A stretch of 57,235 bases of DNA, the filler included, from Bipalium vagum (Eukaryota), in assembly GCA_037834085.1 (NCBI GenBank). It is 3 parts of 3 records of this genome, joined end to end, with 100 filler letters (N's around TTAATTAATTAA, not from the genome) between each part and the next. Parts side by side here need not be neighbours in the genome. Positions count along the whole stretch, not along the records: positions 18,578 to 40,802 come from JBBMKC010225332.1; 2 more parts are not named here. One strand, 5' to 3'. Shown here one piece after another: positions 18,578-40,802 of the stretch. Both the position numbers and the translations under genes were made by a program. The stretch's first letter is position 1, and each line of letters opens with the position of its first letter. The notes below the pieces were generated by a model. That model saw nothing but the letters and a program-made list of their open reading frames with translations, did no database searches and was not told where the DNA came from.

Positions 18578-18619
18578 CCCCCCGAATAAAAAAAATTAAG
18601 TAAGTAGAAAATAATAATA

Positions 18620-19300
18620 AATTAATAATCTATTGCTTGTGTAGTCGCATGTGTTTTTGGGTCTACAATATATAATGGATTTTTTCAATATCATCATCAA
18701 TTTTCTATTGATCATTTATAATAATTGTATCCCTCGGCATACAGTTTTAACTATTGATAGTAGAGTTTCTGGTTTTCTGTTTTCAACTACCTCTATGTAT
18801 ATTTTTGATAGTTTATGACTGTTAGCTGCAATTCCAAATACCCTGATTCCGTGTTCAGTTGCAAGGTCTGGATGATATTTAATATTTATCCCTAAATAAA
18901 CTTTCATCAATTTGGCATATAATTTCTAGACCAACTAATTTACAATGATTTATTATGTAATAATTATTACAACATTTTCTTACGTTATCATATAAGTCAA
19001 TCAAAAATTTTTATCAGCATCAACTTCTTTCTTTATGTCAGTTTCTTTTTCATCTATTGACCATTTCAATAGTAACTTCAAATTAATACATAAGTGAAAT
19101 CTATATTTTTCGAAAATATAACCTGTCCATATGCTAATATATTTCTTATAATTGGCTTGGCACAGAATTTACATGGTAAACATTGTTTTAAAACACCTTT
19201 GGAAAAAGGTAATTAACAATTACATCGGTTGTACCAGTACAGATTGGTTCGATATTTTTCTGATGAAATAAAATTCTCTTTATTTTTTCCCCGCGGCGTA
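18620..19300 (-). mobile_element. Merlin / IS1016(ISXO2)-like transposase remnant
   Basis: LVGLEIICQIDES, RVFGI...KIYIEVVENRKPETLLSIV, VDPKTHATTQAID; frameshifted. Confidence 0.75.
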
Positions 19301-19709
19301 ATAACTTGATTATTCATATCATTGGTATTTGAGTGTGTAAACAGACATTGTATTGTGGTAAAAATACATTGGTTTTAATGATCTTTGTTGATTACACCAA
19401 CTATTGGTGAAGGGACTTAGATTGTAACTTTCGATTATTTAACACTTAGAAATTATTATTATGTACAGATTTCTGGATTTTAATAAGAAGTATTTTTATT
19501 ATAATTGTCAATTTAAGTTAAAATAAACTAGATTCTGGTTATATTATAATAAGTAACTTATACCTTTGAATTTGAAAATAATATATTAAAAATTTTATCA
19601 AAACATTAAAAATAAAAATAAGTTTAAGGTCAAAACTTAAGATTATATTTCACAATGAAATAAAGTTTATCAAACAGTCAACAAGTTAGCTCTATTAGAA
19701 AGACAAATT

Positions 19710-22700
19710 TTACACTTGTAATAACAGTGCCACACCTCCAAGAACCCATCTGGCTGGCTTTTCCTTAGTTTTCAAATTAAATGTCCAGACAAAAGTTGGA
19801 CCTCTTTCCTTAGTTTTATAGACAGGACAGGCATAAACGTTTCTTAAATCTTGACGATCAACTGGAATGGCTTTTATGAAAATAACTGGCATTGATGGAC
19901 TCAGTTCTTTTAATCGAGCCTCTGCTATCATACCAGTTTGAGTATCCCATCTAGCTCCTTCCATAAAAAGACCATGTACATAAGCACCGTCTCTTGGAGG
20001 ACCTCCCATGTCTTCTTTGTTCTTTTTGGTTACATCACACTGCAAAGCCATTCTATCCAAAGGCCATTCATTTTTCCTAGCCATTTGCTGCATTATGGCA
20101 GTGAGGAAAGATTGTGGATTGAATAAGCCTCCTAACCAAATAACACTTGGTAATTGGAAATCAGTGGTCCATATCTCGAGATCTTTGATACGTGTCAACA
20201 AATCAGCATACCACACCGTTAAACCATATAGACTTGGATATGCTCTCTTACTCCATGATTCAGGTATTGTGTCCATGAAAAGAGAGTTGGACAATGCTTC
20301 CATGTCAGATGTAATAGTCAGTTCACCTTTCAAACCGAGATTTAATTCTTTCAAAGAGCGTCGGATTTCTGATGTTAGAATATTCATTCGTTCGCATTCC
20401 TGGAATGCAACTACTACATAAGGGTTCCTTTCTTCAGGTGGCACTTTGGCTTGTATTTCTACCATGTTGAAATCGTCTGGCAATTTTTCAGTGATATCAT
20501 CTAAGATTTGTTTGATCTTTTCTTCCCGACTAACGCCTGAGGACGAAGCTCCTGAAGAGTCTCGAGGCTGCATTTCGAAAACCGTTCTAAACAGTTTATC
20601 ACTCCTGGTTGTAAGGAATTCTATCTCAGCATTTGGATGTAAGCCGTAAAGATTGGGACTTTCTGCTGGTAAGCATTCGTCAATATAAGAATGATAACCT
20701 TTATAATCAGTATTGGGAGGAACTTTGAAACCAGGCGCCATATAAAGTTCACCATCGAGCATTTCGGTTTGTAGATATTCTTCCAAATATGTCTTACACA
20801 GTTTTCTGTCCCAGTCATCTGTGATGTGACCACCGTACATGATTTCTCCGAACAAATAACGCAAATCTTCCCATGGCACTTTACTGTTTGCTTCCAAATA
20901 ATTATACAGAACATTAACACTGATTGCAAGATCACCGGTATTGAAGGGATATGATCGATTCCAACCCTGAGGTCCAAATTTTCGTCTCTCAGATACAACG
21001 GCATGGAAATAGCACAAAGCAAAGAGAATGGTTTTGAATTCATTTTCTTTGGCGCACATTTCCATGGTTTCTTGATTGAAATTATTGAGAGCTTTGTGTA
21101 GATTTGCCAGCATTCCTGTTGGTGGTTCGTTGGTAATTTTGATGGCATTTTCCAAAATACCTTGTGGTATTATATGAGATTCTGGAGAACCAGATGGTTC
21201 GGCACTGATAAACACTCGATAGCTTTCGTGACTTTCTTCAGCGTACTCTTCGAGCTTCTTTTCTAGACTACTTAACCATTTTGAGACCAAGTGAATGTTT
21301 TGTAAGACAACCCAGTGGCCTTCTTTCGCTCCCAAATCCATTGCAGCTTCGGCAACAATTTCTTGACCCTGTCCCAGAGAGATGTTCTTAAAATTTTTAT
21401 GGTCACCTGAGAATCCCAATTTCTTTCCTAATGCTTCAACGTCTTTTAATGGATCGACTCCAGGAGACAGAATGAAAAAGATGGGTGTTGCTGGACCTGA
21501 TTCTTCAAACGACTGAGAGAATTCAACTCCTCCTCCTTCAACATATTTGTGTCCGAGTTTTTCATCTACAAAATCCGCAACAGCATATGTCATACGATCG
21601 GGTCTCAAAGCTCTCATCATACAGAGCCGCTGTAAGGTAGTTTTATTTTTCCATTCTTGGGGAAACTTTTCCTTTTCTGGTGTTTCACTTTCCACGAATT
21701 TCTTCCACCTTTTAGCTGATCCTTCAATGTCACGATCCAAATTTTTAAATTCGTCCAATGCAGACAATGCTTTGATACCACCCCAGCTGTTATTGGACAA
21801 GAAGTCTACAGGTGAAGTTAAATTAGGAATGATTGGAAATCTCAATAGGAAGTCCAGTTCAAAAGCATTTATTTCTTTAGTGCCCAATAAAATTTGAAAT
21901 GACATTTGCGCTGTGAAAATCAATTTGTCCTTTTCAAACAACCCTCTTGAAGTATAGAGATACACGGAATATGTGATACTATTGATTAAGTTTTCAACTC
22001 TACCTTTCAGTTCTTCACTTGGCTCAGCTTTGTCAATGGCCTTTTCGAAAACGACTCTGAACGCTTTGAGCGAAAATTGATACATGGGATTAATTTTGTT
22101 TAGATCATTTAAAATAAAATATAACAGTGATGCTCGAGCAGCCGCAGGTCGATACAGCTCTCTTGTCTCATTTATTGTTACTTCAGTTATCTTGGCCTGT
22201 TCTACTTTCTCTTCAATTTCGATGGCAGTACGCTTGTTGTTTTCAAGATTTTCTACCAGTGCATAATCGCCCAAGAAGTTGCCTTCGGCAGCAGAAAGTC
22301 TGTGAAGAAGAGAATCTTCCAGTTCTTTCAGAGTGATTTTAAACTGATTTTGCTGTTTTGTTAAATCCAATTTCAAAGTTTCCAGATCTGATCGTTCTTT
22401 GTTGACAACGTTCGCCAAAAGTTGGTCTTCCAATCCATCTCGAGTAACCGTAAAATTGATTATTGTTGTCTGAGCTTGCATTTCTGGTTTGTAGTGTGGG
22501 TTGGCTAATTTTGTTTGTAGAATCAATTTGAAATCTTGGTTATATTCGCATTCTTTGTCTCCTAATTTGATGGCTCTTCCTTTTTTAATTGTGTTTCGGC
22601 CTAAGAGATGATCCAAAACAGGATCCATAGTTTCTTCAATGTTTTCGATCAAAACAACATCTCCAGCCGAAACAGCTTGCTCAATGGTATCCAAATATCC

Positions 22701-25700
22701 TTTCTGTCCTAATCTTACAATTTTCAAGTCTGATCCATATCGGGTCTTAATCCATTTGATTCCTTGCAATTGAGGATCGATAATCAAGGGCCAACGCTCT
22801 GCATTTGTCAGAATGGTGGCATTTTCAATTGACATTCTATCGCTTGGCAATCCTTCGTTGTTCCATGATGCTATAATGGCGTCATCAATGAGCATTTTAA
22901 GCGGATCTAAATTGCTGGTTATAGGTATTGGTGGATTCAGGTTTGTTAAATATGGTAGCCAAAATGTTTCCATCAAAGAAACTCTGTACGGTTTCGTAAA
23001 GCATCCAACATATGACAAGAAAGCCACTGTGATGAGTACATCACCTGGTAATGTTTTTTCTTCCTCTTTGTACTGTTCTACTTGTTTGGCCCAACGGACA
23101 TTTTCACTGGCCAGGCCTCCCACTAATCTGTTCGCCAATTCAATGGTCTTATATGTCAAATCGGCTTCATCTTGACATTTTTGTTTGTCGCTACGGGCTT
23201 TCTCAAATTCATCTTGAAGCTTCTGAAGCTGATCTTCCAATTGCTTGATTTTGCCTTGAATACCAGCAAGTTTTTCTGTCGCCTCTCTCAACTCTTCGTT
23301 AGCTGCTTCCAATGCATCTCTTTTCGGTTTGACATCACAAAATATTTCGTAATAAATAATAATATTAATGACCCATGAACACAATCCAGCAGCTGCAAGA
23401 GACTTGCTTTTTATTTCTTCAGGATTAAAATTGGGATCTTTAGTATATTCCTTTGCAGCCTTTAAGGAAGCCTCAGGAATTTGGTCTTTGTTGTAGTTAA
23501 TCAAATTATCCAAAAACGCGTCCACTTTACTCATTATGGACCCTTTTGCAGCTTTCCATGATCTATCCTTTGGAAGTTTTCCATTTGGTGCCATTAAACA
23601 CATGACGGCTGCTGAAACATCGACAACTGCAGCTGGTGGTGTTCCAAAAGATTTCATTTCTGTCAGATTATTCTTGTTTAATGTATTCAAAGCCGCTTGG
23701 GCTGCTTGAAGTGCCGGTTCGGCTTTCAATAAATCTTGTTCACAGTCCCTCTGTTTCTTTGAGACTTCAGCTTTGATTTTCGAAACTTTTTCCTCTTCAA
23801 CATCGGCAATACTTTTCTCTGCTGTTACCTTTTTCGTTTCTGCACCGACTATTTCCAAAAGTTTATTAGCATCGGCATTCTTTTGTTCCAGTTCAACCTC
23901 TTGAGCAGCTAATTTGGCTTTGAGATCATCGACCTGTTGAGCTGTACTTTCTAATTTCTGCAGACCATTTTCCAGACGATTCATTTTTCCCTGTAGTTCA
24001 GTATGCTTCTTTTTCAACATGTTACTATAAAGTGCAATTTGTTCCAAAAATGATTTCGGTGTCGTATAATTGTAACGACGCTCGTTCTGTAAATATGAAA
24101 CACTAACTTTGTTCACAGTTTTGTGAACAAAAGACATAAATTTCGAAGTTGACCCCTTATACTCTTCGGGTAGCAGTTCAATTTCTTGCAAAAATCGATG
24201 AGATACAGATATCAAAGCATCTTCTGGCCATTCGTGGAACCAATCGATTGAGGTACAATTAACGACTGCTGGGAACTTTCTAGATCTCACTCTTAATGTA
24301 GAACCTACAGGAGAAAAGCAGAGAATTACTCGCAAAGTCGATCGAACTTTATTGATGAAAAACGACCAACAGTTTTCTCTACTGTCAATAAGTCCAGTGC
24401 TTTTCACTTCACTTCTCATACTACCGATAATGTTTTCCATTTCGTCATCAGGAAACAAGTCCAATATTTCACCGGATGCCAATAAATCGTTAACGAGGAC
24501 GAGAAATTTTTCATCGGCTATTTGAGCATCCGTCAGCAAGAACACGACTCCAATGTTCTTAACACCAGCTTTCAAATACAATGCTGCCAAATCGGCTTTC
24601 AAATCATTGATACTATAACCTTTACGCAAAGTAATTTGGAAAACATCCAATGAACTGATAAATGCAGCCAAGCGGGACAGAGACTGTTTTCCACTGCCAC
24701 CGACACCGACCAGTAGGGCATAACCACGAGGTGATTCTAAAATCCGACTAATACGCAAAATATGGGCCACAGCATCTTCAAAAAGTACAAGATTCATTGC
24801 TGCATTGACTTCATTGTAACTTTCTAAAGCCTCTTTTAAAATTTTCAACAGGTCTTCCGATTTTTCGACCTGCATGTATTTTGGATCACCGATACCCTGA
24901 GTAAAATGACAAAACATATTTGGTTTTTTGAACAGAACCGCTTCATCCAAATCTTCAAAAGATTTTTTTGTGATTTCTTTTTGCAATTTTTGGAAAGTTT
25001 CAATGTCCTGATCGTCAATCAATTTGTCATTGTAAACCCGTTCCCCTTCGTGCATCCACAACCGAATGAGATCGGTCGGTTGTTTCAAAGATTCCGGACC
25101 GGCAAATAAGATTCCTTGGAAAATATTCGACAAATCTCTCAAATTGAAAATGTAATGGAATTTTATGGCTGTGGGAAGGAATGCACTATTGATTCTGTTG
25201 TGAAAAGTCAGTGCCAAATCCACCAAGTTTGGAACAATTTTTATTAAAGTCGGTGAGAAATTTGATGAGAGTTTTTCAGAGAGGATTGTTGAATAAATTG
25301 CTTTGAGTGCATCTTGACCTGGGAAACTGAGTGCAAATACACAAAAGTGTCTCTGGAAAAAAAACACAATTAATAAATTGAATGATTGATGATCAAGACA
25401 TGATTAGAAATCATTTTTCAAAGAGATTACCAACCTGTAGTCTGGGACTAATTGTGAAGCTTCCAGCCGTTGGGTTCATACATGCCATATATTGGGTATT
25501 ATGGATATCCTTCAAAGTCAGTTTGGCCCTATCGTACCAATGAGAATAATCAATATGCTGCCTGATGAGTGTATGGGGTTGAACTGTAAAGTATTTATCC
25601 ACCTGGTAAAAATGATCAATAAAATCAAAAGATCTTCCAAACTATCAATAGACACTCACCTCTGGCATGTTCATGTCATCAATAAAGTAAATCAATTTCT

Positions 25701-28700
25701 TTGAACCCACAGGACCATAATTGCGACCAGCCTTCTTTTCCAGAGGTTTTTCCAAAACTCTTTGCAACATTTCACTCGTTGTATAGAAATTGAAAGGTAC
25801 ATTGGCAACGGCATAATTATCACCGATACTGTTCAATTTGTCTTGCAACAAGACAGTTTTTCCTGTTCCAGCACCTCCGACCAACATCACAGGACGTCTC
25901 TTTTCAATAAGCAAATCCAAGAAGTAACGATATCTTGTCGTTTCAGAAGTTGGAACCAGAACAGCCTAAATCATTAAGAAACAGTTATAATTGTGAATTT
26001 TCTACACGTTTGGTGCATTAAAAAAAATCAATAAATCGAGATTGTACTTGTAAAGGTTGTTCAAGATCCATTTCAAATTTGGTCATTCTTTTGGTCCATG
26101 GTTCAAATTTCTTTGATTCAGAATCGATATAGTAATCGAAAACTGTTCCCTGAGCAGGGAACTTGATTGTTTTGAATTCAGTGACCCACCATTTAGTAAA
26201 TTCAACTCTGTGATCGACGAGCTGATCTTGGAACATACAGCTTCCAAATGCCCACACGGCACAAAAGACGAAATAAAGTTCATACCATTCTTTGGGACAG
26301 TCAGCTGGAGTGTTCTCTGGTACCAGTAGAACTTCGAGTAAATAGCACAACATTTGAATGTGAGAGATTTCAACTATTGGTGTTATTTTTTTAAAACGAC
26401 TTTTGAGAGCTTCCAAACATATCGGTACATATTTATCAAACAGAATTGTCAGATTTGCTTGTTCGGACTGTACTTCTCTGGTACTAATCCAACTGTTGAC
26501 AAATGGCTGCCAGCCGAGGTCCTGAATGTTTTATTATCAAATAGGAGTAATTTTCAAAGACAAAAATGAAAGTATACCTGGGGATTTATGTAAAGAATTC
26601 CAGCTCTTGAAACAGTGGCTGGAGTAGCGGTTTTCAGATGACTGATTTCAAAAAGCAATCTCATTGATGGTGTAAGCGGTATTCTTTCATTACTGGCCAA
26701 TGTAAGAACTTTGTTGTCATCCATGACGGTATTAAGAGATTCAATCCACATCGGATCAATATCCCCATCAAGAACAATCCATTTCGGCCCGTCAGATGTT
26801 AAATTGGCAAGATCACGCATGATCACAGAAAACAAACCGTCTTTCCATTCTCGAGTAGAAGGATTGATAATACCGAATAATTCATCATTGGTCACGGCTT
26901 TCGGATTGAGATCTACTGCCAAAGGTTTCTTTTTCAAATTAACATAGGTTTTGTTCAACGTTTTCCACACCATTGATTTTCCCGTTCCCGCGTTACCCAA
27001 TACAAATACCGAATGACGAACGGCAAAAAGCTCTTGCAATTGAACAACTTTCAAAATGAAGTTTTCTTCAGGTTGCAATTTCAGATCCAAGGTGGCTTGT
27101 CTAACGTGTTTTTCAAATTCCGGATCTCTCTTTCTCGGAACATCCAAAGCAGGGAAAAGATCCCCGATGAGTCCCATGAAAATTGGCGTATCGTCAGTGA
27201 CGATTTTAGGAATATTAAAATCTCTCAATGCTCTCATCAGTACTTGATCTTCTGGTCGATCAGGGTCACTTCTTTTTAGTGCTCCTGCTACTACCAGGAC
27301 AGATTTAATGGCTCTCAATCCCCAATCATAATGGTCTTGTTTCGACAATAATTCTTTACACAACTGATACAGAGTTATAAATTTCCTGGCCAAAATTCTG
27401 GCCTGTAGAAATCCTTCGGCAACCAACATAATTTCACAAATAAGTTCGAAATCTGGAACGACCATAGCACATGGTCTAAAGAGAGCTTTCAAATTCTCAG
27501 GCAATTCCGTTCTGCCAGCATACCCTGGATTCATGGTGATGAAAATACCAATAGCGGGATCTAATGAAATTTCTTCTCCCAGAAAATCAAATCGTTTTCG
27601 TTTGTTTTTTATTGCATCTTGAATACATTTGACTTGTACAGCTACAACACTCAATACTTCAACTGATATTCTGTTAAATTCATCGAAACATCCCCAGCTT
27701 CCTGATTGTGCTAAGCCTTTGTAAATATTACCAACGGATTTGTAGTCCATTTGTTCGGAACAATTGAACACATACACCATTATTCCAAGAGCCCTACCGA
27801 GATCTTTTGTAGTTTCGGTTTTGCCAGTTCCAGCGGGTCCGGCTGGCGCTCCACTCATTGTTAAATGAAGCGATTGTGTCAAAGTAATGTAACATCTATC
27901 TGTCAAAGGCGTGATAACCAATCTCGGAGTATTACCCAAATATTCATGTGCATATCGGAATTGAGCGTCGCAAATGTTAATGAAACAATCCTTGTCGGCC
28001 TCGCCCCATCTGTGTCTCAGCTGACAGAGCCATGTAAACGATTGAGAATTGTCTATCTTTTGTGCTATCAACTTTTGAACAACGTCTCGGTTGTGGACAT
28101 CAATGGTACAGATTGTCATAACTTTTTGTCTGTCATCCTTCGACAATTCGCCAATCAACAACGTAATCAATGCATTGAGCTGAGTGATTTGCTTTTTGTT
28201 GAAGTCTTTGAGAGCATTTTCATAGCCTTCTTCAAGACGAGCAAATGCCAAATTAACTTCAGTGCCCCAAGAAATTTGTGATGAGGTCAGAGCAACTTGT
28301 GCCGGACATTCGAAAATCCACTGATCACGAGATTTTTCTTCCGCTGCACTGACGGATTCAGCAAGCACTGTTCTCATGGTGTTACGCATTTCATCCAGTA
28401 ATCTGTTCAACCATATTTCCACTTGTCCATTTAGGTCGCACTGGTTGGTCAAATTGACCATTTCATCATCCTTAGCATACATTGCCGAGGCCATTTTCGT
28501 ATTTTCCACTCCGTTTTCCTTGACAAATTTCAGTCGTGCTAAGCTGTCAAAAAGTTTCGTTAAATGTTTCATGACAATTTCCGGAGAGTTTCCATTCGAC
28601 AAAATATCCAACAGATCCGCTGAGGAGACAAAATAAAATCGTGGAAAAGCCAAACGTTTGGTTTCTAAATATTCTGCAAGTGCCTTTTCACATAACACCA

Positions 28701-29667
28701 ATTGAGTTTGTATAACTTCCAGTCTTTCATAAAGACGAGGTTTTCCTGTGGCTTTGACAACATTTGTGGTTACTTCAACTTCTGATACCAGACCCTTGAA
28801 ATCCTTATCGATTTTATCGAATCTTTCCGAATCTTCAGGCAACTGCTTTCTTATATCATCCGATCCGATGAAAATCGATTCCAAATGAGACCATGTACGC
28901 TGGACTTCAAACCAAATCTGAATCACTTGATCAGCTGTGGACAATTTCTTTTGCCAGTTGAAAACTTCATCGTAAAAGTGAGAGATATATTTGGATGTCA
29001 TCATGTTTTGCAGTTTTACTTGATCTTCTTCCAAAGTCTCTATGAGTTCTTCGCTGGCTTTTAATAATGTAATTTTCGTTCTGCTGTGCTTCTCGTGTTC
29101 AAATTCCATTTGACTCCAAGTACTGTCAAGTTCCTTCAAAACCTTTTCCATGCTCATTTCTTTCACAGCCTTCTCTACAATACTTCGTACTTCATCTTCA
29201 AAATTGTGCAAATTCAACTTCAACAAGTCTTCCAGCGTTGTTCCATCGTTCATGTCAAATCGGACTTTTGTCGCTGCCATTAATTGAGCCCAATGTCTGT
29301 CTCGGATAGCAGAATTTTGCAATTCATTTACGGCTCTCAAAGACGTCATCATGTTTTTAATCTGATCCTCTACTCCAATGTATGTGTCCCAGGCCCGCAA
29401 CTCTTTATCCAGTGATCTGATATTTTTTGCAAAATTTTTACAATCTTGATCCATCTGTTCAACATTGATTTCTTTCCAAAGAGTCTTTTTCCACACTTCA
29501 ATGCTAAAGTTGACAACATTTACATGATCCCAAAGAATCTTCAGCATTCTCAATTCTTTTCGACATTGTTTCAATTGTTTGAATTCTGGAACCGTGACTT
29601 CGAAGAGAGCAGCAGATTCATTGATCTCGTCCATCGCTGTTTCCATTTCAAAAATCTCAATATTTTT
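19710..29667 (-). CDS. Axonemal outer-arm dynein heavy chain, beta type (DNAH9/11/17 family), C-terminal ~3226 aa: linker, AAA1-6, stalk/MTBD, C-terminal domain. Exons 29667-26578, 26521-26048, 25965-25660, 25602-25435, 25352-19710
   Basis: P-loops [33 protein letters not shown]; [12 protein letters not shown]; [10 protein letters not shown]; ends [12 protein letters not shown]. Four phase-0 GT-AG introns (56, 82, 57, 82 nt) give one frame. Starts at a phase-0 acceptor (aattcag|[18 protein letters not shown]). Confidence 0.96.
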
Positions 29668-29735
29668 CTGAATTAAATTAATAGAATTTAATGAGTCTTT
29701 TTAACTATTTAGAACTATTTAGGAATATTAAATTA

Positions 29736-29737
<2 letters not shown>

Positions 29738-29770
<33 letters not shown>

Positions 29771-29775
29771 TAATG
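29738..29775. repeat. (AAT)n microsatellite
   Basis: About 11 AAT units read directly. Confidence 0.9.
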
Positions 29776-31501
29776 ATAACAAATTTAAATATTTTATCTT
29801 CGTTGTTAGTTACCTCTGTCATAAATTTTTATGGATATCCTTATTGCAAATCTTAGAGATATTAGTGATTTCTAATAAACATAATGGAAAATAATCCAAT
29901 AAATCATTGTTTTTGAGTTAAAAAAAATAATATAATTAATTCTGGATTTGAAATAGTAACGAAAACTCTACGGAATAATTAATTTTTCTATTGTGTGGAA
30001 AACAAAATAATTTTAAATAGTTCTAACCAATCTAAAAAGTTCCAATGAAATTAAAAAGTTTTCAATAAAAACTTGAATTTTTATTGGCTCTTCTATTTAT
30101 ATTTAGCCGCAAAATATTAAAAATATTTTTATTTACTTTTTGTAACTTGTTGGACTGAAAAACAGATAAAAAAGTAAGTCGACATTTTAATTAACATTTG
30201 CAATTTTTGTTCTATTAAGAATTTCAATTAATTAATTTAATGCAAGGTTAAAATTATTTCTTTATTTTAATTACAATTAACATTAACTAATTGAATTTTG
30301 TTTTAATCAAAACTCATTTTTATTTAAACAAATCAAATTAAAAATGATTTATATATATTTCTATAAAATAATATAATATAATGTTAATTATCATGATTTA
30401 AAAACAAATATCCATAAAATAATAAATAAACTGGAGAAATATTTTCAAGTATTATCAAAATTCTAATCAAACTAAATTTTAATAAGTTGCTTCACTTGTT
30501 TTTTTTAATTCGTCTAAATTCATTTAAATAGTATCAGAAAGGAATTAAAGTATCCAACAACGAATATCGTATTTTGAAGTCTTTCAAAGTTTAGACTGTG
30601 GAGAAATTATCCAAAATAAATACGTAATATATTAATAATATTTTTATCGTCTGAAAAAAGATTAAACCATATAAATCAAACTTATGGATAATTCTTCAGT
30701 AATCCGTCTTTAAAAGGCTTATTTGAAGAAAAACAAATCTCTGATTTTTATATTAAATTGGTGAATGATGGAGTTCAAAGGGTTATAATTACTATAAATA
30801 TATTTAATAATATAAAATAAATTTAGAAAAATTAAAATATTTTTTTTTTCATTTTTGTAAGGATTTATGAAAAATGAAAACATTTTAATGTTTTGGTCAA
30901 TGATAAAAATTGAGTATAATTATCGAATTTTTAAATTTTCTTCTATCTTTTAATTTTTTTGTTTGAAAGAAAATTTCGCAAATGAGAATATATTATTAAT
31001 AATATTTTTGAAAAAAATGAAACTAAAATATTTATATTTTTTGTAACCGGGTCAAGCTTTTATCAATTAAAAATCTTCAGTTTATTATTAGAAAAATTAA
31101 AAAACAAAACAAAAAAGCCTTTCCTGTTGTGGTCTTGATTAAAACTATAAAAAAGCAAAAATAATGATTATGATAATAGTATTAATAATAATTGCTAATA
31201 AAAGAAATTTGCAGTGTAATGTGACTTTTATATTAAGATTCTAAACTTTTTCAATTTTTTGTGGATATTTAATTTTTTTCAAAATTCTTTACATTATTTA
31301 GGTTATTTATGTATTTTTTATTATGCATATTTTCATTTATTTATTATTTTAATAATTATTTATTTTAATAGATATATAATTGATTTTTTATCAATCCTTA
31401 TTTTAAAATTATTTTTCTTTTAATAATTTCTGTTAATAGATGGTCTTTTATGAACAGTTCTCAGTTTTACTTAATATAAAATAATTTTATTGTTTTTGAA
31501 G

Positions 31502-34500
31502 TGGAATGGGAAAATTTGAAATCAATAAGCGATCTGAAACGATTGCCTCTACCTTACCTTTTGCCTCAATATAACGAAATCACAGAAAACTCGACAGCTC
31601 CAATCTTGGACAAGTGGTCTGTCACTCAAATGTGGATCACCTACGCCAGCTTGATGAAGCAGATTTACAATCCGACTCACAAGGAAGAAAATTTTCAAGA
31701 TGGATTTTTCTCTAACTTTAATGATCAACATCACAAAGAGATGAGCGCAAAATGTTTTCCTGAAGAAATAGCTTTAGACTTAAGTATCCCAAGAAAGCTG
31801 GAAAGGAAACTACTTCAAACTGATGATCGTGGCCAGAACGATCTGGATGATGCTGTAGTAGTACAAAGTAACGATAGTCAACCAAGTTTTCAGACGAACT
31901 TTACAGAAAAACAGTGCAAAAAGTATGCTTTTTCTCATCTTTAAATTTAACTAACGATTCAGTATAGTCATATAATCTTATTAAAAGTAAAGATAACATT
32001 TAAGGCTTTAAAATAAGAATATAAATTGTTTATTAATGACTTTTTTACTTTATTATTACTTAATTATTGTGATATGTAAATTATGCAATATTAATAACTA
32101 ATCATACATTTATGTATTACGATTGTCAGAACTAAAGTGATTTAATAAAAATATAAATTATTAATTGAAATTTTATAAAAATAATCATAAAATTTTAATT
32201 AAAAGTTAACTATTATGCAGATGGGAACCATTTCAGTAAATGAGTTTGTTCCACTGTTTTTATTTTATGAAAAAAATTATCAATCCGTAATGTATAACAA
32301 ATATTTTAAAGTTAAATTTAAATAGTAAAAATAATATGATAATAATTAAATTTTTAGAAATAATTTAAATAATATTGCATTTTTAATCATATTATTATTA
32401 TTTATATTACGAGTATTACTTAAATTCCTGAAAAATGAGAATTTCCAAATATTTGTATTAATTTTACTTTATTTTTATGGGAAAAGGTTTTAAAATATTA
32501 CTGATTTTAATAATTATAAAGAAAATGTATGAATTATAATTTTATTATTATAATCTGTTGTTATAATAATTATCCTGCTGTGGTCGCCATGTTAGTTACT
32601 GCGACGTTATCAACAGTTTCTGAATTCATAAAGTCAAGATTTGGTAACATTTTTATTCGAAGAAAATAATTGTATCGTTTGAATAAGTGTTCTCTTTTTA
32701 TTATTTACTTATACAAATAAATTATCTGCGACTTTTGTTAACATTAATTTAATTATTATTATTATTTTAAATTTTTAAAAGAAACCTTTATATTTATTAA
32801 AATTATTAAAAAATTTATTTTACACTAAGGATTAAATTTTAATATATTACTTTAAAGTTTATTTTAAAAATATTTATTATTTATTTTTTAATATTATTAT
32901 TTAATATTTTCTTGAAATTCTTCAATCTATTTTGTATTTATAAATGAGAAATTTATTTTATTTTATATTATATAATGAGTACCACACATAATGAGTGAAG
33001 TTTATGGCAAATCTGGATTTCAATAAATCCGAACTTTGTTATGTAACAACCTAATAGGAAATAATCTTCATAAATTTTTAATTTTAATTAGTTATTTTAT
33101 AATTAATTGTCATAAACTATGCATAAGCTCTAAAGATATGAGTTATTACAATACTTTTCCTTTATATCTTATTAGGAGCATAAATAAATTTTCATCCTTT
33201 TAAGACAAAGAATTTTTATTAACAAAGAACATTTAAAGTACATTTAATCAAAATATTTTCCATCACAATAAACTACTTTTTCCATCTATCAGGGAAAAGA
33301 TGAATAACCCGTTGAAAAAAGTATGAGTTGGTTTGGATAAAATTGTCAATGAAATTCTACACCTCTCCAATATTGCTTAAGTGTACATCGGAAAGACTGA
33401 GTTAGATGGAACAAAATAGGTGAAAATCCGTTGAAAAATCCGGGGAATGCTGGATGCTGTAAAATTTCCCATTTTAGGTCAGTCAAAGTTTCCTTCGTTC
33501 TTAATGCCACATGTGGTCTGGCGTTGTCACACAGAAGAAGCACTTAACTTTGTTTGGTTGCAAAATATGGCTGTTTGGCAATTAATATCTCGTTCAACTG
33601 TCTCAATTGATTGCCGTATAATTCCGCAGTATCAGTCTCAGATGATATAATAGTTCATAATAAAGCACTCCCTGTATATCCCATAAGATACACAGGAGTA
33701 TTTATTTTAGTTACAATTTCAAAGGTGATTAAAGTATTTTTTAAGAAATTAAATAAATGCATAAGCAATTTTTTATTCTTTAAAATTCAGTCAATTGCAG
33801 TATTTCGTGTTCTACCTACCTTCTTTCTGCAAGCGATCCAATGTCTCAACAATATTTGACCATCTTATGTGATAAAAAATTGTGATTTATTAGTTAAACG
33901 TTCTTCACATGATAAAATCGAAAATAAAAAATTTTTTTTTCATATTACAGATGAAAAAATGTTGAAAATAAATAATTTTTACTAAAACCATTATCATATT
34001 TTCAATGTTATATTTCAAAATAAGGCATTAGTTTTAAATAATAATAATCTTTCATTGGATATTTTATTTTATTTTTGTAAAAAATGGATAAAGTTTGAGT
34101 AGCAATCTTTCTAGAAAATATATTTGATTTTAGAATAATTTCTTTGAAAAGAAAATAATAACTGAGCTCTAAATTCTGGAATATTAATTAATTAATCATT
34201 TGTTGGGGCTTATTAATTAATTCAACTGTTAAATTTTCAAAACTGAAATTTTCTAAAAAACAACAAAGTTAATTTTAAAAGTTAACAATCTAAAGTCTGG
34301 AATCAGGCTTTGAAGTTGCATTTGAAGAGCCTCTAATTTTCAGCTTCTTTATATTAATTAATATCTCCGTAAAAACTCTTAGTTAACATGTTGCTTAGCA
34401 ATTAATTAATTCTTATCATTCAGTTTTTAACTATTTGTTATAGAAAGAAGGAAACTAATTTTATTGAAGAAATGAAATATTGGAAATCAAATTTAAAAGG

Positions 34501-35070
34501 TGTATTGATTTGCCCTATTCCCAATTGTGATGGCAAAGGTCATTCATCGGGACAATATAATAGTCACCGAAGCTTATCCGGGTGTCCTCATGTGGATAAA
34601 AAGCTAGTTAAATCATTGCATATTGAGCNNNNNNNNNNNNNNNNNNNNNNNNNNNNNNNNNNNNNNNNNNNNNNNNNNNNNNNNNNNNNNNNNNNNNNNN
34701 NNNNNNNNNNNNNNNNNNNNNNNNNNNNNNNNNNNNNNNNNNNNNNNNNNNNNNNNNNNNNNNNNNNNNNNNNNNNNNNNNNNNNNNNNNNNNNNNNNNN
34801 NNNNNNNNNTAATTGTAATTCCATTAATTTTAATATATTTATATTTATATATAAATTTTCAAATCAGTTTAAATCATTTTATTAAAAATAAAAATATTAC
34901 TATTAATAATTGTTTATTTTAGATGCCCAACAGTTGGATGCAATGGTTTTGGTCATATAATCAGTCAATATTCTTCTCATCGTAGTTTATCAGGATGCCC
35001 TATTTTTAATAGAAAAAAGGAATCAAATAATAAATTGAAAAAGTCTCCAAAGAAAAAAAATGTTGATTAA
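31502..35070 (+). CDS. Myt1/NZF-family C2HC zinc-finger protein with two fingers. Exons ~31502-31922, 34444-~34630 (runs into the gap), 34923-35070; start not determined
   Basis: [26 protein letters not shown] and [26 protein letters not shown]. The upstream exon has an ALDLS motif and joins in frame (phase 2, aa|gtatgc...ttatag|a). Confidence 0.85.
33170..33700 (-). mobile_element. Mariner remnant in the Myt1 intron
   Basis: [31 protein letters not shown]; C-terminal [17 protein letters not shown]-like segment. Confidence 0.85.
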
Positions 35071-35122
35071 AAATAAATTTGACGTGATAATTCTGTATTT
35101 TAATAAATTTTTATTCTCGATC

Positions 35123-36021
35123 TGTAATACCGTTCCAAGGAAATATTAAGACAAGGGTCTAAAACATCTCAAAATTTATTTGCTGATTATGTAACAAACT
35201 ATACCATCAAATAATAAATTTCTTCTCTCGATATCAGATATTCGATATTCCATCTTAAGGTTTAATGATAAATAATAATAAAAAACCAGCACTGATCAAT
35301 TGTCTGAAAACTCAAGTCAATGTAAACGAATGTTACAATAAGTTATGATATTCAAAAAAAATACTAGATCAATACAAATCACAAAAACAGAAATGATTAA
35401 AATCGATTAAAATTAAATTAAAATGACCTCACCCAGAGCGACAAGGGGTCCCCGCTTAGGGATTCCCAAGCTCGTTGGGTCCCCTTGTAAAAATCCTGTT
35501 CCGTTGGCATATTGTGGCAAAACGAAAGAAAAATATTTCTCCAATCACCGTGGTCGTCGTTGAATAATTCCTGGCTTGTCCTTGTCGTCCACACAATAGT
35601 ATCCTTTCTTCTCCTGCTAAAATCTCGATCCTCTTGTAAATGTTTTCTTTAAATAGTCAAGAGTCACTTCAAGAAGTATTTTAATAGTGGGTACTGTATG
35701 AAATAGTCATCTCTTTATATAGTCGTAGAGATTGGGCTACGATCACCAATTCCCGAGACTCGAGACGGCATTTTCCAACAATAGCCTGCAATTCCTAACT
35801 CTGTCTCCACGCCGAGACAAACACGGATATGTGATGTCAAAAATAACTCATTATTAACAATTTTCATCAAAGTCCGGACGCCGAGACTCTGGTGTATCAT
35901 TCAAAATTTAATATCATTCCTGATTTTAAAAAGATTTATAAAAAAAATTAATTTTTTTATTATTATCTTAATAATAATATTATTATTATTTTATTATTCG
36001 GCGCCTTGGACCATCTTAACA
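35123..36021 (-). mobile_element. Solo-LTR-like segment
   Basis: TG...CA ends, minus-strand CTATATAAAGAG box (~35711-35722), repeated CCGAGAC motifs, GC-rich structured motif followed by a GTGAG donor. No matching TSD seen. Confidence 0.45.
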
Positions 36022-36089
36022 TAAACAAAAAATTAAACAAATACCTTGTGAAAACATATTGTTAAAATCCCACTATAAAAAACACTAGA

Positions 36090-36240
36090 ACTTTCTTGCC
36101 GAAAGTCACTGTTTAGTTACTTTTTGGGAAAGAGGAATCATCGGACCACATTTCTTTGAGGATGAAGCTGAAAATGCAATTACCGTTAATGAGGAACAAT
36201 ATAATTCACTTTTGATTAACTATTTATGGCCAACTTCAAA
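36090..36240 (+). mobile_element. Tc1/mariner-superfamily (DD41D/rosa-like) fragment
   Basis: RGIIGPHFFEDEAENAITVNEEQY. Confidence 0.6.
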
Positions 36241-36659
36241 AAATTAAAGCACATTCTGTCTTAATAAGACTCTTTATAATGAAAAATCCGCAATTTATTG
36301 CACAGCTGATTTTTTACCACGATAAGTTTTAAAAATTAATTTTCTTTTAAATGTCTTTTAATAATTATTTAAATTAACTTTTAATTTAATATTTGAGCAC
36401 TTCATTTTAAAAAAAAATAATATTCCTTTCGTTTTGTTATCTATTGTTTTATAAGCATTACATATAATATTTAAAAATATCTTTTCGTGAAAGTTTCATT
36501 AGGTTTCTCATTTGTAAATTGAAATAGTATCTCCAGAATTTATTTTATATTTATCAGTTAACTGTTTTTCTAAGCAGTTATAAAACAAAATTACATGTTA
36601 TTTTAGAATACTCTGATATAGAAAATTCTACATAATTAAATTTATCAAACGTTATTTTA

Positions 36660-37192
36660 ATATTTTCATTTTGAGGAACGAATAATGATGCGATCTTGAT
36701 GAGCAGTTGTTTTCCTTGGTCTTCCAGATATTGGTGCATTAAAAATATTTCCATTTCTGTTAAATTTGTTGACCCAATTTCTGATTACCTCTTGCTTAAG
36801 CCCAAAATCGCGCGAATGCTTGTGTTCTGCCTTTTTAAACTGCCATAACAACTCGTTCCTTAATATCATTACTATAACTTTTTGCTCTCACGATGATTGA
36901 AACTAAATAGTTTTAGACACTATTTTAAGAAAATAGTTAATAATATTACTATAAATTGATTATAATTCATTATAAATAAAATGACAAATAATTTTTGAGT
37001 GCTTGTTTTTAATGGTTTATGCTTTTTTATTATGTAAAATTTTATATATTAAAATACTTTTTAGAGTTTATTTCTTTGCATATGTAGGAAGATTTTTAAC
37101 AACAAAATTTTAACATAATTATCTAGTAACAGCTAAATTTACATGTGAAAACTTAAAATTAGGGGGTCAACTAACTTTTGAGCGCTACTGTA
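36660..37192 (-). mobile_element. Tc1-like element 5' part
   Basis: IRNWVNKFNRNGNIFNAPISGRPRKTTAHQDRIIIR; terminus TACAGTAGCGCTCAAAAGTT on the minus strand at 37192. Confidence 0.8.
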
Positions 37193-37319
37193 CCTACAAT
37201 CCATATTTTCCTTTCATTGATTAAGTCCTCACATATTATTTTTCCTGCTGGTAATGAGTCATTATTAATGACTTAATATAAATTATAATATTTAAATATT
37301 TTAAAAAAATTAATTTAAC

Positions 37320-38471
37320 ATACCAGGGTTCTTAATTACTGCATCCCATTCATGTGCAGAGAGTTCAAAAAACAATAAAAATTGTTCTTAGGTATTTTAT
37401 TATTTATATTAACATATCTATCTTATGTTAACAGATGAGATTCTCTCTAATTCCTTTTTCTATTAATAATAAATAATCATATATATCTTCTTTAAAATAT
37501 TTAAGCTTTACATTTTTGTATTGAAATCATATGTTCAAGGATACTTCAGTAGCACCATAACAATATCATGGGATTATTTCATGATAATTTAAGCTTGATT
37601 CTCAAAACTTTTAAAGAAGTTAGTTACATTATTGATATTAATACATTGTTCTGTCTTCCAAAAAATACAACTTCAAAACTTCAACCACTTGACGCAGGCA
37701 TAATAAAAAAGTTTAAAACCTAGATATTACCATTACCAACTTTCAAACATAGTCAACAAAATTACTTTTGAGAAAAAAGCGAAAACTTTATTTAAAGAAT
37801 TAAGGTTGACTGATGCAATTATCTATAGTGCCTACGTCTGGCAAGACAATTATTAGGAATTGCTGGAGTCATATAGGGCCTACAAAAGAAGAAACTTTAA
37901 ATAAGCTCACCATAGAACCCATTGAGATTGCAAATTATGAAAACTTAACAAATGAGATGGATCTAATAGATAAAATTAGTTAAGATTTATTGGATTTGGA
38001 CTTGATCATTGAGGATCGACTTTGTGATTCTAGTTACTTTAATAGAAATGCAATATGAAATGGTGCTTCAGCAATCTGAAAACAGTGACCAATAAAAATG
38101 TAAAATGTGAAGAAAAATAATCTTTTCATGTGGTAATAACTTATTTTGACAAGCAAATGTCATTTTTAGTAGGTATTCTTAAAGTTTCAGAGAAAGGTAT
38201 TGAATCCTTGAAGAAAATTGAAAGAATGATAAATTCCAAAAAATGCTGAAATATAAACAAAACTTTAGACTTTTGGCTTAATAAATAAATCTTAAATTTT
38301 GATGTTGATTTTTTCATTTTAAATTTAAGAATTATTTAGACTTTTTATAAATTAAGTATGTAGATGTTACACAATATTTTTGACTATTGGACCTCAAATT
38401 TTACCACTCTCTAATTATTGCTATCGTTAGCATGGGTCCCATTGGTGGTAAAATCAGAGTGAGCACTGTAC
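37320..38471 (+). mobile_element. pogo/Tigger (DDE_1) remnant
   Basis: LPKNTTSKLQPLDAGIIKKFK; terminal CACTGTA at ~38465-38471. Confidence 0.75.
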
Positions 38472-39752
38472 ACATAATTATAGTAAAGTAAAACATACTC
38501 TTTAAAATTCTTAAATTTGTTACTTTTATTATTTCTAAGCCCAAAAACTTTGCTGATCTATAACTTAGTTGCTACCGTTTTCTTAGACTTCTGAATCAAA
38601 AATTACCAAAATAACCTTTACTATAAAAATCAGAATAAACCAATTAATCGAAAATTAATAAAAGAAAATTAAAAATCTTTAGATTAAGTATTAGTATTAG
38701 TTACCGTTTAAGGTATAGATTTGAATTTCAATAAAAAACTTTAGAAGAGCAGAATTTGTTGAAAATCGAAGATATTTCATTAACGATATCCAGAGGAAAT
38801 ATTAATAACAGTTACTATCAACTTAAGCTGAGTGGAACCCCATAATTCGAAGGAAAATTTTTATTTTTTATGGGTTTTAAGCTAATATGAATGCACAAAT
38901 AAAATAATGTGTAAATAAACTGATTGTGTAAAAAACGCAATAAGGAAAGGTTGCAATGTCATTATTGCAACAAAAAATGAGAAAGAAATCTTATCCGTGA
39001 TAACTTATCAGTAATTAAACAAATAATTAAATTATAAATAAGTTAATTAATAATTAAATAAAAAATATAGATAAAAATACCCATTAAAAATAATCAAAAC
39101 TTTAAATGATATTAAGTTTCAATAAACTATGAATAATTAAATAATTTCAAAATAAATAATGTATAAGCATAAATAATGTTATAATCAGGAAAGCTTGATA
39201 AAAAGGAATTTTTAAAAAATACTATCGAATATATAAATTAAAAATTTATGCTTATGAAATATGTCGTTAATAAATTATTAATAAATAAAAATATTATAAT
39301 TTTATTAACGAAACGCTGGTTACATTAAATTATCAAATAACACCAACTTAGTTATGCCAGCGAATTTCATTCATATTCCAGTATTTAGAAATGAATTAAT
39401 TATATGTTAACAATGACAAAAATGGTAAGGAAACTGAACTTAAGAAATAAAAATAAGGCTGATATTTTAATATTTTACACTGAAATCTTATATTTTAATG
39501 AAAAAAAGTAATAGTTAAAGTAAAATTTAGTGATTTTATAAAATTTTTGCTTGAAAATAAAAAACATGATAAAAAGTAAAATTTTTAGATAGATTTTTTT
39601 GAAAAAAATTTTCATTTTTAATGAAAAAATAAGAAAAAGAATTTTATCCAAATATTTTAGTCTGATTTTATAAGTTGATTTTTAATTAAATAAAATTTAA
39701 TTATATAATAAATATTAGGTATTATTAAATACAATAGCGTTGTTAATTTAGT

Positions 39753-39783
39753 GTTCTACTTAGCAACGAAACTCTATAGTAAC
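39753..39783. promoter_or_regulatory. RFX X-box-like sites upstream of the dynein start
   Basis: GTTCTACTTAGCAAC and a second TAGTAAC half-site 60-90 nt before the ATG of a ciliary gene; imperfect consensus match. Confidence 0.45.
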
Positions 39784-39842
39784 ATTTTATAATTAATTTG
39801 ATTCAATTAATTCAGCGAATCTGATTATCATAAATCGCGATT

Positions 39843-40515
39843 ATGACTTCTGATTTAGAGCTGAATGATAAAAGAGGCGAATTTATCGCTGAATATACAC
39901 TGAAATCATTGAAGCAAAAAGCGGACAAGTTTGTAAAGTTATGGAATTCCGAAGAAACCAGACAATTAATTTTGGACTTCTTTGAAAAATCAGAAATTTC
40001 CCATTTATTTGTCTTACAAGCTCCTGGCGGTGGTGCACTACAAATTCAGTATGAATTTCCGACAAATCTTAAAAACAAGGCTTGCTTTTTTTCTAAAAAA
40101 GCTAAAGAAACGATTTCCAAAGATGCGGCATTTAATAAAATATTGCTTTATGGTGATATATCTTATAGTCCCTTAGACCAGTTTTCTTCATTTGTTGACG
40201 AAGTGATATTTTTTAAAATTTTGATCACACCACTCTAAACAAACCTCCTTTAAGGTGATATTGCCAGTTTTGTCGAATTCAAAAAACCAAGAGTCATGGC
40301 CATCGGTAATCTCAAACGATGTCATTCGACATACAAACTCTCTCAAGCACCAAACAGATGTTGTATTGGGTCAATCAAAAGGCAAAACTTTGCTTCCATT
40401 GCCAGCTGGGTCGGAAAAGGTTTCCGAGAACGATATTAACGCCATAGGGTTTGTTTTGTACTTTTAACTGTAATATAATAGCCAAATTAAACATTTAGAT
40501 TTCATAAGACAATTG
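39843..40515 (+). CDS. N-terminal exons of a beta-type axonemal dynein heavy chain (39843-40202, 40255-40448, probable 17-nt microexon 40499-40515); incomplete, contig ends at 40802
   Basis: DKRGEFIAEYTLKSLKQKADK..LYGDISYSPLDQFSSFVDE|VILPVLSNSKNQESWPSVISNDVIRH..GQSKGKTLLPLPAGSEKV matches the recalled N-terminus of sea-urchin beta dynein/DNAH9/17. GT-AG introns of 52 and 50 nt. Confidence 0.9.
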
Positions 40516-40724
40516 GTAAGTTAAATATTGATATTAAATACAGTTAGGTTGGAATTCAGTTTAGTCTGTTATATTATTTTCTGCTAGCCTATACGAAATA
40601 TATTGCTACGATATTAATAAAAATATGAAATATATTATTGATATCTTAGTTATTATCATTTATGAAAATAAATAATATAAATATGGAAAATTGTTACCTT
40701 AATAAAATATTTACAAGGACAAAG

Positions 40725-40740
40725 GATAATAATAATAATA

Positions 40741-40802
<62 letters not shown>
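40725..40802. repeat. (AAT)n microsatellite at contig end
   Basis: About 25 AAT units running into the linker. Confidence 0.95.

What the first reader, a model, noticed from the sequence alone, without database searches (positions are those of the whole stretch)
19710..40515. Beta dynein heavy chain in two divergently oriented pieces: candidate split / trans-spliced gene
Seen: the intact linker+motor (~3226 aa, no lesions) is on the minus strand and starts at a bare splice acceptor at 29667. A start codon and the first ~190 aa of the same dynein class lie 10 kb away on the plus strand, reading outward. The pieces do not overlap in protein coordinates, and I found no dynein exons between them. 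The only gap between them (34629-34809) is bridged by two co-oriented Myt1 exons, so it is unlikely to hide a flipped contig. Known: Giardia builds its outer-arm dynein beta mRNA by spliceosomal trans-splicing of split introns, and Ustilago expresses cytoplasmic dynein as two polypeptides. Inference: one gene broken by an inversion in the tail/motor intron and rescued by trans-splicing or fission. The missing ~1050 aa would continue on the plus strand beyond the contig end. Alternatives are two interleaved paralogs or a misassembly.
Basis: partly seen in the sequence, partly recalled or inferred. Interest (0 to 1): 0.88.

Follow-up and report, generated by a model that had tools for sequence, protein, structure and literature searches.

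The report
Dynein gene ends facing apart
A flatworm draft scaffold carries the intact start and the intact motor of one outer-arm dynein heavy-chain gene on opposite strands with the middle third missing; this is more likely a wrong join in a fragmentary assembly than a truly split, trans-spliced gene, and the data available here cannot decide.

Summary
On the minus strand, five phase-0 GT-AG exons (29667 to 19713, 3226 codons, no lesion) encode the linker, motor and C-terminus of an outer-arm beta dynein heavy chain, matching DNAH17 from residue 1246 and DNAH9 from residue 1268. On the plus strand, two exons (39843-40208, 40255-40448) encode residues 1 to about 187 of the same class. About 1060 tail codons are absent from the piece; two full-length flatworm references find nothing on either strand. 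The acceptor at 29667 is a real, conserved intron end: the closest relative has it at the same codon, and Protopolystoma homology starts there too. Both pieces are under strong purifying selection. The N gap lies between two co-oriented zf-C2HC (Myt1-type) exons, which supports the orientation but does not prove continuity. Every relative I could examine has a collinear gene. My best reading (about 0.55) is one ordinary single-copy gene seen through an incomplete, probably misjoined short-read scaffold. A real inversion remains possible, either rescued by trans-splicing or fission (about 0.13) or a null allele (about 0.12).

The parts
19710..25352 (-). Motor exon 5 (1880 codons plus stop): AAA3 lid to C-terminal domain
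   Evidence: acceptor ...ttccag before 25352, stop TAA at 19712-19710
25435..25602 (-). Motor exon 4 (56 codons)
   Evidence: GT-AG borders, phase 0
25660..25965 (-). Motor exon 3 (102 codons, AAA3 P-loop region)
26048..26521 (-). Motor exon 2 (158 codons)
26578..29667 (-). Motor exon 1 (1030 codons): linker (DHC_N2), AAA1, start of AAA2. It begins right after an AG acceptor.
   Evidence: The same acceptor position is seen in the closest relative (L005), and Protopolystoma homology starts at the same residue.
29668..29800 (-). 3' end of the intron upstream of the linker exon, with a polypyrimidine/AG acceptor and a (TAA)n array at 29734-29779. This is the candidate site of a wrong join or of a real breakpoint.
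   Evidence: G+C 0.19-0.20 over 29578-31577
31501..31944 (+). Unassigned 147-codon ORF behind a plausible acceptor; possibly an exon of the Myt1-like gene
   Evidence: no Pfam family, no convincing Atlas neighbour
34472..34628 (+). zf-C2HC (Myt1-type) finger exon that runs into the gap
34629..34809 (.). Assembly gap (N); not filled or looked up
34923..35070 (+). Second zf-C2HC finger exon, the last exon, with its stop
   Evidence: PF01530, E 9e-14
37568..37723 (+). pogo-type DDE_1 transposase remnant, one of several transposon fragments between the Myt1-like gene and the dynein start
39843..40208 (+). Dynein N-terminal exon 1 (start codon plus 122 codons)
   Evidence: 80% identical to the closest relative
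40255..40448 (+). Dynein N-terminal exon 2 (64 codons plus 2 nt), then a GT donor; the next exon is off the piece
   Evidence: the exon ends at the same place in L001
40726..40802 (.). (ATA)25 microsatellite at which the scaffold ends

Best explanation
The piece holds the two ends of one ordinary, single-copy outer-arm beta dynein heavy-chain gene of a parasitic flatworm. The ends are the first ~187 codons and the last 3226 codons (linker, six AAA modules, stalk, C-terminal domain). The ~1060 tail codons in between lie on DNA that is not in this 22-kb scaffold, presumably beyond the microsatellite at its right end.

I take the head-to-head order (motor on minus, Myt1-like gene and dynein start on plus) to be most likely a product of the draft assembly. 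The likely fault is a wrong local join or orientation made in the very AT-rich, microsatellite-bearing intron upstream of 29667. On this reading the real gene is collinear, as in its relatives, and is cis-spliced from the last tail exon to the conserved acceptor at 29667.

Shown: the identity, integrity and class of both pieces; the absence of the tail; the conserved acceptor; collinearity in relatives. Inferred: that the join is an artefact.
For: 1. Both pieces belong to the beta class and do not overlap.
2. Both are intact and constrained: dN is 0.07-0.12 against saturated synonymous change relative to the closest relative.
3. Their distances to the single genes of relatives run in parallel. 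The N-terminus and motor are 80/90% identical to SRR33002330, 46/75-85% to Cichlidogyrus and 54/78% to L008. That fits one orthologue.
4. Outer-arm beta is reported as duplicated only in chordates and hexapods, not in flatworms (PMC5100056).
5. Every relative with enough DNA is collinear. Cichlidogyrus casuarinus runs from N-terminus to motor on one strand and so does L008. An ENA contig and Paragonimus miyazakii have the N-terminus followed by DHC_N1 exons on the same strand.
6. The piece looks like a short-read draft: 22 kb, an estimated 181-N gap, and an end in (ATA)25 only 350 nt after exon 2. The sequence next to the acceptor is 19% G+C with a 46-nt (TAA)n array 67 nt away.
7. The only large introns of this gene are the two at which the pieces end, so an assembly would be expected to break or misjoin exactly there.
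8. The plus-strand neighbour also looks incomplete. It has only two C2HC fingers and one ORF that opens at an acceptor, as if its 5' part were cut by the same join. This point is weak.
Against: There is no N between the motor and the left zf-C2HC exon, so the join is inside a contig and not a scaffolding link. The gap is flanked by co-oriented fingers, so simply flipping the right-hand contig does not restore a collinear gene, and the tail would still be missing. A random chimeric join would rarely bring together two parts of the same gene 10 kb apart, so the error would have to be a local one. No repeat pair that could explain an ambiguous orientation is visible inside the piece. I obtained no read evidence either way.
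Confidence: 0.55

Rival explanations
1. The inversion is real and is rescued by trans-splicing. A block holding the Myt1-like gene, the dynein start and the tail was inverted, with one breakpoint in the tail/linker intron. Two pre-mRNAs made from opposite strands are then joined by the spliceosome, from the donor of the last tail exon to the acceptor at 29667, giving one normal mRNA. This would resemble C. elegans eri-6/7 or the Giardia split dyneins.
For: One inversion gives exactly the observed order and strands. The break is at a conserved, canonical acceptor. Both halves are intact and constrained. The sequence from the motor to the zf-C2HC exon is contiguous, and the fingers across the gap are co-oriented. 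Transposon remnants lie in the interval. Precedents exist (PMC11414722; PMC5100056). From my own knowledge, flatworms also have spliced-leader trans-splicing machinery.
Against: There is no RNA evidence at all. No direct or complementary repeat is visible in the piece, although the donor half-intron is off the piece. All relatives are collinear. Such cases are extremely rare compared with local errors in draft assemblies.
Confidence: 0.08
2. The gene has really undergone fission into two genes. The tail (about 1240 residues) and the linker plus motor (about 3220 residues) are made as separate polypeptides that assemble afterwards. The motor mRNA would start by spliced-leader addition or from a new 5' exon at the 29667 acceptor, and translation would start at the in-frame Met at 29646.
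For: Splits before the motor domain are known for cytoplasmic dynein in Agaricomycota. Giardia makes the N-terminal and C-terminal parts of an outer-arm chain as separate polypeptides (PMC5100056). An in-frame ATG lies 7 codons after the acceptor.
Against: That Met is conserved in unsplit genes too, in Cichlidogyrus, Protopolystoma and human DNAH9, so it is not an adaptation. The acceptor is shared with relatives whose gene state is unknown. No promoter, 5' exon or stop after the tail can be examined. No metazoan axonemal dynein is known to work in this way.
Confidence: 0.05
3. The inversion is real but recent or polymorphic, and it simply breaks the gene. It would be a null allele, perhaps heterozygous or present in part of a pooled sample, too young for either half to have decayed.
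For: This needs no special rescue mechanism. Intact halves are expected if the event is young. Draft assemblies of pooled worms can pick a minor haplotype at one junction.
Against: Outer-arm beta is needed for ciliary and sperm motility, so such an allele should be rare. There is no way to see haplotypes here. It faces the same objections from lack of reads.
Confidence: 0.12
4. There are two copies. Either the plus-strand start or the minus-strand motor belongs to a second, partial or complete, copy of the gene (a segmental or inverted partial duplication), and a complete gene lies elsewhere or extends rightwards off the piece.
For: The plus-strand start is expected to continue into tail exons off the piece, so a complete plus-strand gene to the right cannot be excluded. 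Collapsed recent duplicates are a common cause of odd joins.
Against: The closest relative yielded one N-terminal, one linker and one C-terminal contig only. Beta is not reported as duplicated in flatworms. A 3226-codon ORF without a lesion and with low dN is not a decaying fragment. The motor's own upstream exons would have to interleave with the Myt1-like gene and the other copy.
Confidence: 0.12

Closest known systems
Collinear outer-arm beta dynein heavy-chain genes of other flatworms (Cichlidogyrus casuarinus JBJKFK01 contig, locus L003; Logan contig of SRR23372228, locus L008)
   Same: Same protein class and domain order. The motor is 75-85% identical and the N-terminus 46-54%. Exons are large and introns tiny.
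   Different: In those genes the N-terminus, tail and motor follow each other on one strand. Here the tail is missing and the two ends face apart. Their upstream neighbours are not a zf-C2HC gene.
C. elegans eri-6/7: the 5' part of a gene inverted by transposons, with function repaired by trans-splicing guided by ~930-bp direct repeats (PMC11414722; PMC3213143)
   Same: The 5' and 3' parts of one gene lie head to head on opposite strands. Relatives have a single contiguous gene. Transposon remnants lie at the locus.
   Different: No flanking repeat pair is seen in the piece. There is no RNA evidence. The genome structure is not verified. The middle of the gene is not even on the piece.
Giardia split outer-arm dynein genes joined by spliceosomal trans-splicing of split introns (Kamikawa 2011 and Roy 2012, as summarised in PMC5100056)
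   Same: An outer-arm dynein heavy chain encoded in separate pieces, with breaks at intron-like positions.
   Different: In Giardia the pieces are on different chromosomes, the structure is confirmed in seven assemblies, and bridging mRNAs are known. According to PMC5100056 the affected chains are the gamma and alpha types (GilDHC3 and GilDHC4). Complementary half-introns cannot be tested here.
Split cytoplasmic dynein DHC1 of Basidiomycota (Ustilago Dyn1/Dyn2; Agaricomycota split before the motor domain), made as two polypeptides (PMC5100056; PMC125636)
   Same: The break here lies about 25 residues before DHC_N2, that is, before the motor domain, as in Agaricomycota.
   Different: Those genes each have their own start and stop and no bridging transcripts. 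Here the motor piece begins at a splice acceptor, and the end of the tail piece is unseen.

Membership tests
Outer-arm dynein beta heavy chain (DNAH9/11/17, DHC4-beta) | Linker (DHC_N2), six AAA modules, coiled-coil stalk with microtubule-binding domain, and C-terminal domain in the canonical order | tested here: met
   Pfam; five exons, 3226 codons, no lesion
Outer-arm dynein beta heavy chain (DNAH9/11/17, DHC4-beta) | Closest to beta chains rather than to alpha/gamma outer-arm or inner-arm chains | tested here: met
   For the motor, DNAH17 and DNAH9 score about 1.6 times the next class. The N-terminal exons hit DNAH17, DNAH9 and the Chlamydomonas and Tetrahymena beta chains only.
Outer-arm dynein beta heavy chain (DNAH9/11/17, DHC4-beta) | Complete N-terminal tail (DHC_N1, about 1200 residues) joined to the motor in one gene | tested here: not met
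   Only residues 1 to about 187 are present. Residues 181-1242 of the L008 reference find nothing in the piece. Whether the genome holds them elsewhere could not be tested.
Genic trans-spliced split gene (eri-6/7 or Giardia type) | Separate transcription units in a verified genome structure | tested here: inconclusive
   The opposite strands are seen in one draft scaffold only.
Genic trans-spliced split gene (eri-6/7 or Giardia type) | A mature mRNA that joins the pieces at canonical splice sites | not testable with these tools
   No RNA run holds the sequence. The acceptor is canonical and conserved.
Genic trans-spliced split gene (eri-6/7 or Giardia type) | Repeats or complementary half-introns that bring the two pre-mRNAs together | tested here: inconclusive
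   No repeat pair lies within 18578-40802, but the donor half-intron lies off the piece.
Split dynein made as two polypeptides (Basidiomycota DHC1 type) | Each part has its own start and stop codon and its own transcript | tested here: inconclusive
   The motor piece starts at an acceptor. The nearest in-frame Met (29646) is also conserved in unsplit genes. The end of the tail part is unseen.
MYT1-family C2HC zinc-finger protein (the neighbouring gene) | Several zf-C2HC (PF01530) fingers | tested here: met
   Two fingers, E 1.9e-12 and 9e-14. They are the only two in the piece.
MYT1-family C2HC zinc-finger protein (the neighbouring gene) | MYT1 domain and the N-terminal finger cluster | tested here: not met
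   None was found in the piece, so the gene model is incomplete or the protein is short.

The most novel reading that the evidence does not exclude
The head-to-head order is real, and this flatworm still makes a working outer-arm beta dynein. It would do so either by spliceosomal trans-splicing of two pre-mRNAs from opposite strands at the conserved tail/linker intron, or by making the tail and motor as two polypeptides. Either would be the first such case for an axonemal dynein in an animal.
Probability: 0.12. Interest if true: 0.85.

Novelty: not a real feature. Interest (0 to 1): 0.3.

Why it matters
If real, this would be an animal counterpart of the Giardia split dyneins and of C. elegans eri-6/7. 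An essential 4400-residue motor would have been broken by an inversion and repaired at the RNA or protein level, in a phylum that already has trans-splicing machinery. It would also test directly whether a dynein tail and motor must be covalently joined. If it is an artefact, which I think more likely, it matters only as a warning: gene models and synteny in this draft assembly are unreliable around large AT-rich introns. The gene itself is an ordinary orthologue.

Tried and rejected
1. Reads. The look-up of sequencing runs found one holder only (X1, probably DNA and possibly the source sample) and no RNA run. So there is no read evidence.

2. This genome elsewhere. No protein identical to the window's exons is in the 5.8-billion-protein collection, and the exact N-terminal ORF is on no recorded contig.

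3. Synteny. ORFs from 29700-39800 and 18578-19709 match nothing in any related locus. The zf-C2HC gene is not next to the dynein in Cichlidogyrus or L008. Contigs of the closest relative are too short to help: 165 nt upstream of the linker exon and 173 nt upstream of the start.

4. A flipped right-hand contig. I rejected this as a full explanation. It would set the two fingers against each other and would still leave the tail missing.

5. A shared microsatellite as an overlap between the right end and the 29734-29779 array. I rejected this because, read on the gene's sense strand, the two arrays are reverse complements of each other, not the same repeat.

6. Weak tblastn hits of 37553-37853 to the linker of L008 (E 0.002-0.4). 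These are at chance level after 229 queries, and the stretch is a DDE_1 transposase remnant.

7. Rfam and tRNA scans of 29500-32856 and 34810-40802 found nothing.

8. The representative search with exon 1 gave only exon-sized fragments and no full-length protein.

9. The joined, spliced protein was never sent to any search. Exons were searched one by one by reference, and only their lengths were summed.
Full report
**What is there**

The piece (18578-40802) is very AT-rich: 19-29% G+C outside genes and 36-41% over the dynein exons.

On the minus strand I mapped five exons: 29667-26578, 26521-26048, 25965-25660, 25602-25435 and 25352-19713. All are in phase 0. They are separated by GT-AG introns of 56, 82, 57 and 82 nt. 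Together they hold 3226 codons without a stop or frameshift, and the stop is at 19712-19710.

Pfam finds the whole canonical series from DHC_N2 (linker) through AAA_6, AAA_5, AAA_lid_1, AAA_8, the MT stalk, AAA_9, Dynein_heavy and AAA_lid_11 to Dynein_C. Against solved structures the two large exons match DNAH17 from residue 1246 and DNAH9 from residue 1268 to the last residue. Their scores are about 1.6 times those of any other dynein class.

On the plus strand an ATG at 39843 opens exon 1 (to 40208). A 46-nt GT-AG intron follows, then exon 2 (40255-40448), and then a GT donor. Exon 1 matches DNAH17 residues 8-118. Exon 2 matches DNAH9 residues 141-197. Both also match the beta chains of Chlamydomonas and Tetrahymena.

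The same class of heavy chain is present as residues 1 to about 187 on the plus strand and about 1245 to the end on the minus strand, head to head, 10.2 kb apart.

Its translation does not resemble the residues that follow in relatives.

**The gap, tested first**

The N run (34629-34809) lies between two plus-strand exons, each encoding a zf-C2HC finger of the MYT1 type (E 1.9e-12 and 9e-14).

- The left exon's ORF runs into the N run.
- The right exon starts at an AG 114 nt after the gap and ends in a stop at 35070.
- These are the only two such fingers in the piece.

This supports the relative orientation of the two flanks, if they belong to one gene. It says nothing about continuity, distance or frame across the gap.

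**The tail is absent**

I used two full-length flatworm references. One is the gene of Cichlidogyrus casuarinus (locus L003; species identified through PMC11727194). The other is an almost intronless gene on a Logan contig (L008).

tblastn of their translations against the piece, down to E = 1, hits only residues 3-180 and 1243-2018 and onward. The same queries find tail exons in Cichlidogyrus and in Paragonimus miyazakii (L002; PMC7370270), so the search is sensitive enough. About 1060 codons are therefore not on this scaffold, on either strand.

**The acceptor at 29667 is a real intron end**

- In the closest relative available (Logan run SRR33002330), the linker exon is preceded by ...tttcag at exactly the same codon (L005).
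- In Protopolystoma xenopodis, homology also begins at reference residue 1243, with no tail exon in the 1.5 kb upstream (L006).
- In Cichlidogyrus and L008 the position is inside a continuous ORF.

So this is a lineage-specific intron, large compared with the other introns of the gene. It lies about 25 residues before DHC_N2, at the tail/linker boundary.

**One gene or two**

Both pieces are constrained. Against the SRR33002330 relative, dN is 0.07-0.12 while synonymous sites are saturated.

Identities of the N-terminus and of the motor to relatives run in parallel:

| Relative | N-terminus | Motor |
|---|---|---|
| SRR33002330 | 80% | 90% |
| Cichlidogyrus | 46% | 75-85% |
| L008 | 54% | 78% |

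The relative yielded a single N-terminal, a single linker and a single C-terminal contig. A broad survey reports outer-arm beta duplications only in chordates and hexapods (PMC5100056). I therefore read the two pieces as the two ends of one orthologue. A recent partial duplicate cannot be excluded from one scaffold.

**Real or artefact**

A single inversion of the block [Myt1-like gene, dynein start, tail], with one breakpoint in the tail/linker intron, gives exactly the observed order.

- C. elegans eri-6/7, where transposon-induced inversion of the 5' part is repaired by trans-splicing guided by direct repeats (PMC11414722).
- The Giardia outer-arm dyneins, and the basidiomycete DHC1 genes split before the motor domain (PMC5100056).

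In favour of a real structure:

- There is no N between the motor and the left finger exon.
- The fingers across the gap are co-oriented.
- Flipping the right-hand contig would not restore a normal gene.

Against a real structure:

- Every relative with enough sequence is collinear.
- The scaffold is 22 kb, has an estimated gap, and stops in (ATA)25 only 350 nt after exon 2.
- The DNA next to the acceptor is 19% G+C, with a 46-nt (TAA)n array 67 nt away. Short-read assemblers and gap closers make wrong local joins in this kind of sequence.
- The pieces end at the gene's only large introns, which is where an assembly would be expected to fail.
- The plus-strand neighbour also looks truncated at its 5' side. 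This point is weak.
- No eri-6/7-like repeat pair is visible within the piece, although the relevant donor half-intron is off the piece.

**What could not be done**

- Only one run holds the sequence, and none of the holders is RNA.
I worked beside those places afterwards and masked them in scripts.
- The genome is absent from the protein and contig collections, so the tail scaffold, copy number and any mRNA could not be examined.
- The spliced model was never joined for a search. Exons were searched separately by reference.

**Verdict**

Local errors in draft assemblies are common, and rescued split genes are very rare. Weighing that, I put about 0.55 on an ordinary collinear gene seen through an incomplete, probably misjoined scaffold. 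I put about 0.13 on a real and functional split (trans-splicing 0.08, fission 0.05), about 0.12 on a real but inactivating recent inversion, and about 0.12 on a partial duplicate. Long reads across 29.0-31.6 kb and 35.0-40.8 kb, plus RNA reads at the 29667 acceptor, would settle it.

Noticed in passing
L001, L004, L005 (Logan run SRR33002330) versus window 19713-29667 and 39843-40448: The closest relative shares 80-92% of residues with the window's dynein exons. Its third-codon G+C is 0.62-0.96, against 0.29-0.43 in the window, while its intron and flank DNA is AT-rich. This is a very large shift in codon composition between close relatives.
   Followed up: partly
window 33346-33543 (-), 36666-36869 (-), 37568-37723 (+): Short remnants of DNA transposons lie between the two dynein pieces. 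One is a mariner-like ORF, recognised only from memory of its motif, with no Pfam hit. One is a Tc1-type helix-turn-helix ORF with a weak HTH_32 hit. One is a pogo-type DDE_1 fragment. None has a second copy in the piece.
   Followed up: partly
window 31501-31944 (+): A 147-codon ORF in slightly G+C-richer DNA, behind a plausible acceptor and with its first ATG near codon 43. It has no Pfam family and no convincing Atlas neighbour. It may be an exon of the zf-C2HC gene or may not be coding at all.
   Followed up: partly
L008 3409-17254 (Logan run SRR23372228): An unidentified relative (75-78% motor identity; contig 35% G+C) encodes the whole ~4460-residue beta heavy chain in two ORFs with at most one interruption. 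It makes a convenient full-length reference.
   Followed up: partly
L007 10001-10498 (Fasciola gigantica) and L002 (Paragonimus miyazakii contig start): In other flatworm drafts the dynein N-terminus is also cut off from the rest. In Fasciola it is annotated as a separate 165-residue 'dynein beta chain'. In Paragonimus it is truncated by a contig end. Fragmentation of this gene at its 5' introns is therefore common in assemblies.
   Followed up: no
I sent nothing from them to any search tool afterwards and masked them in scripts.
   Followed up: no
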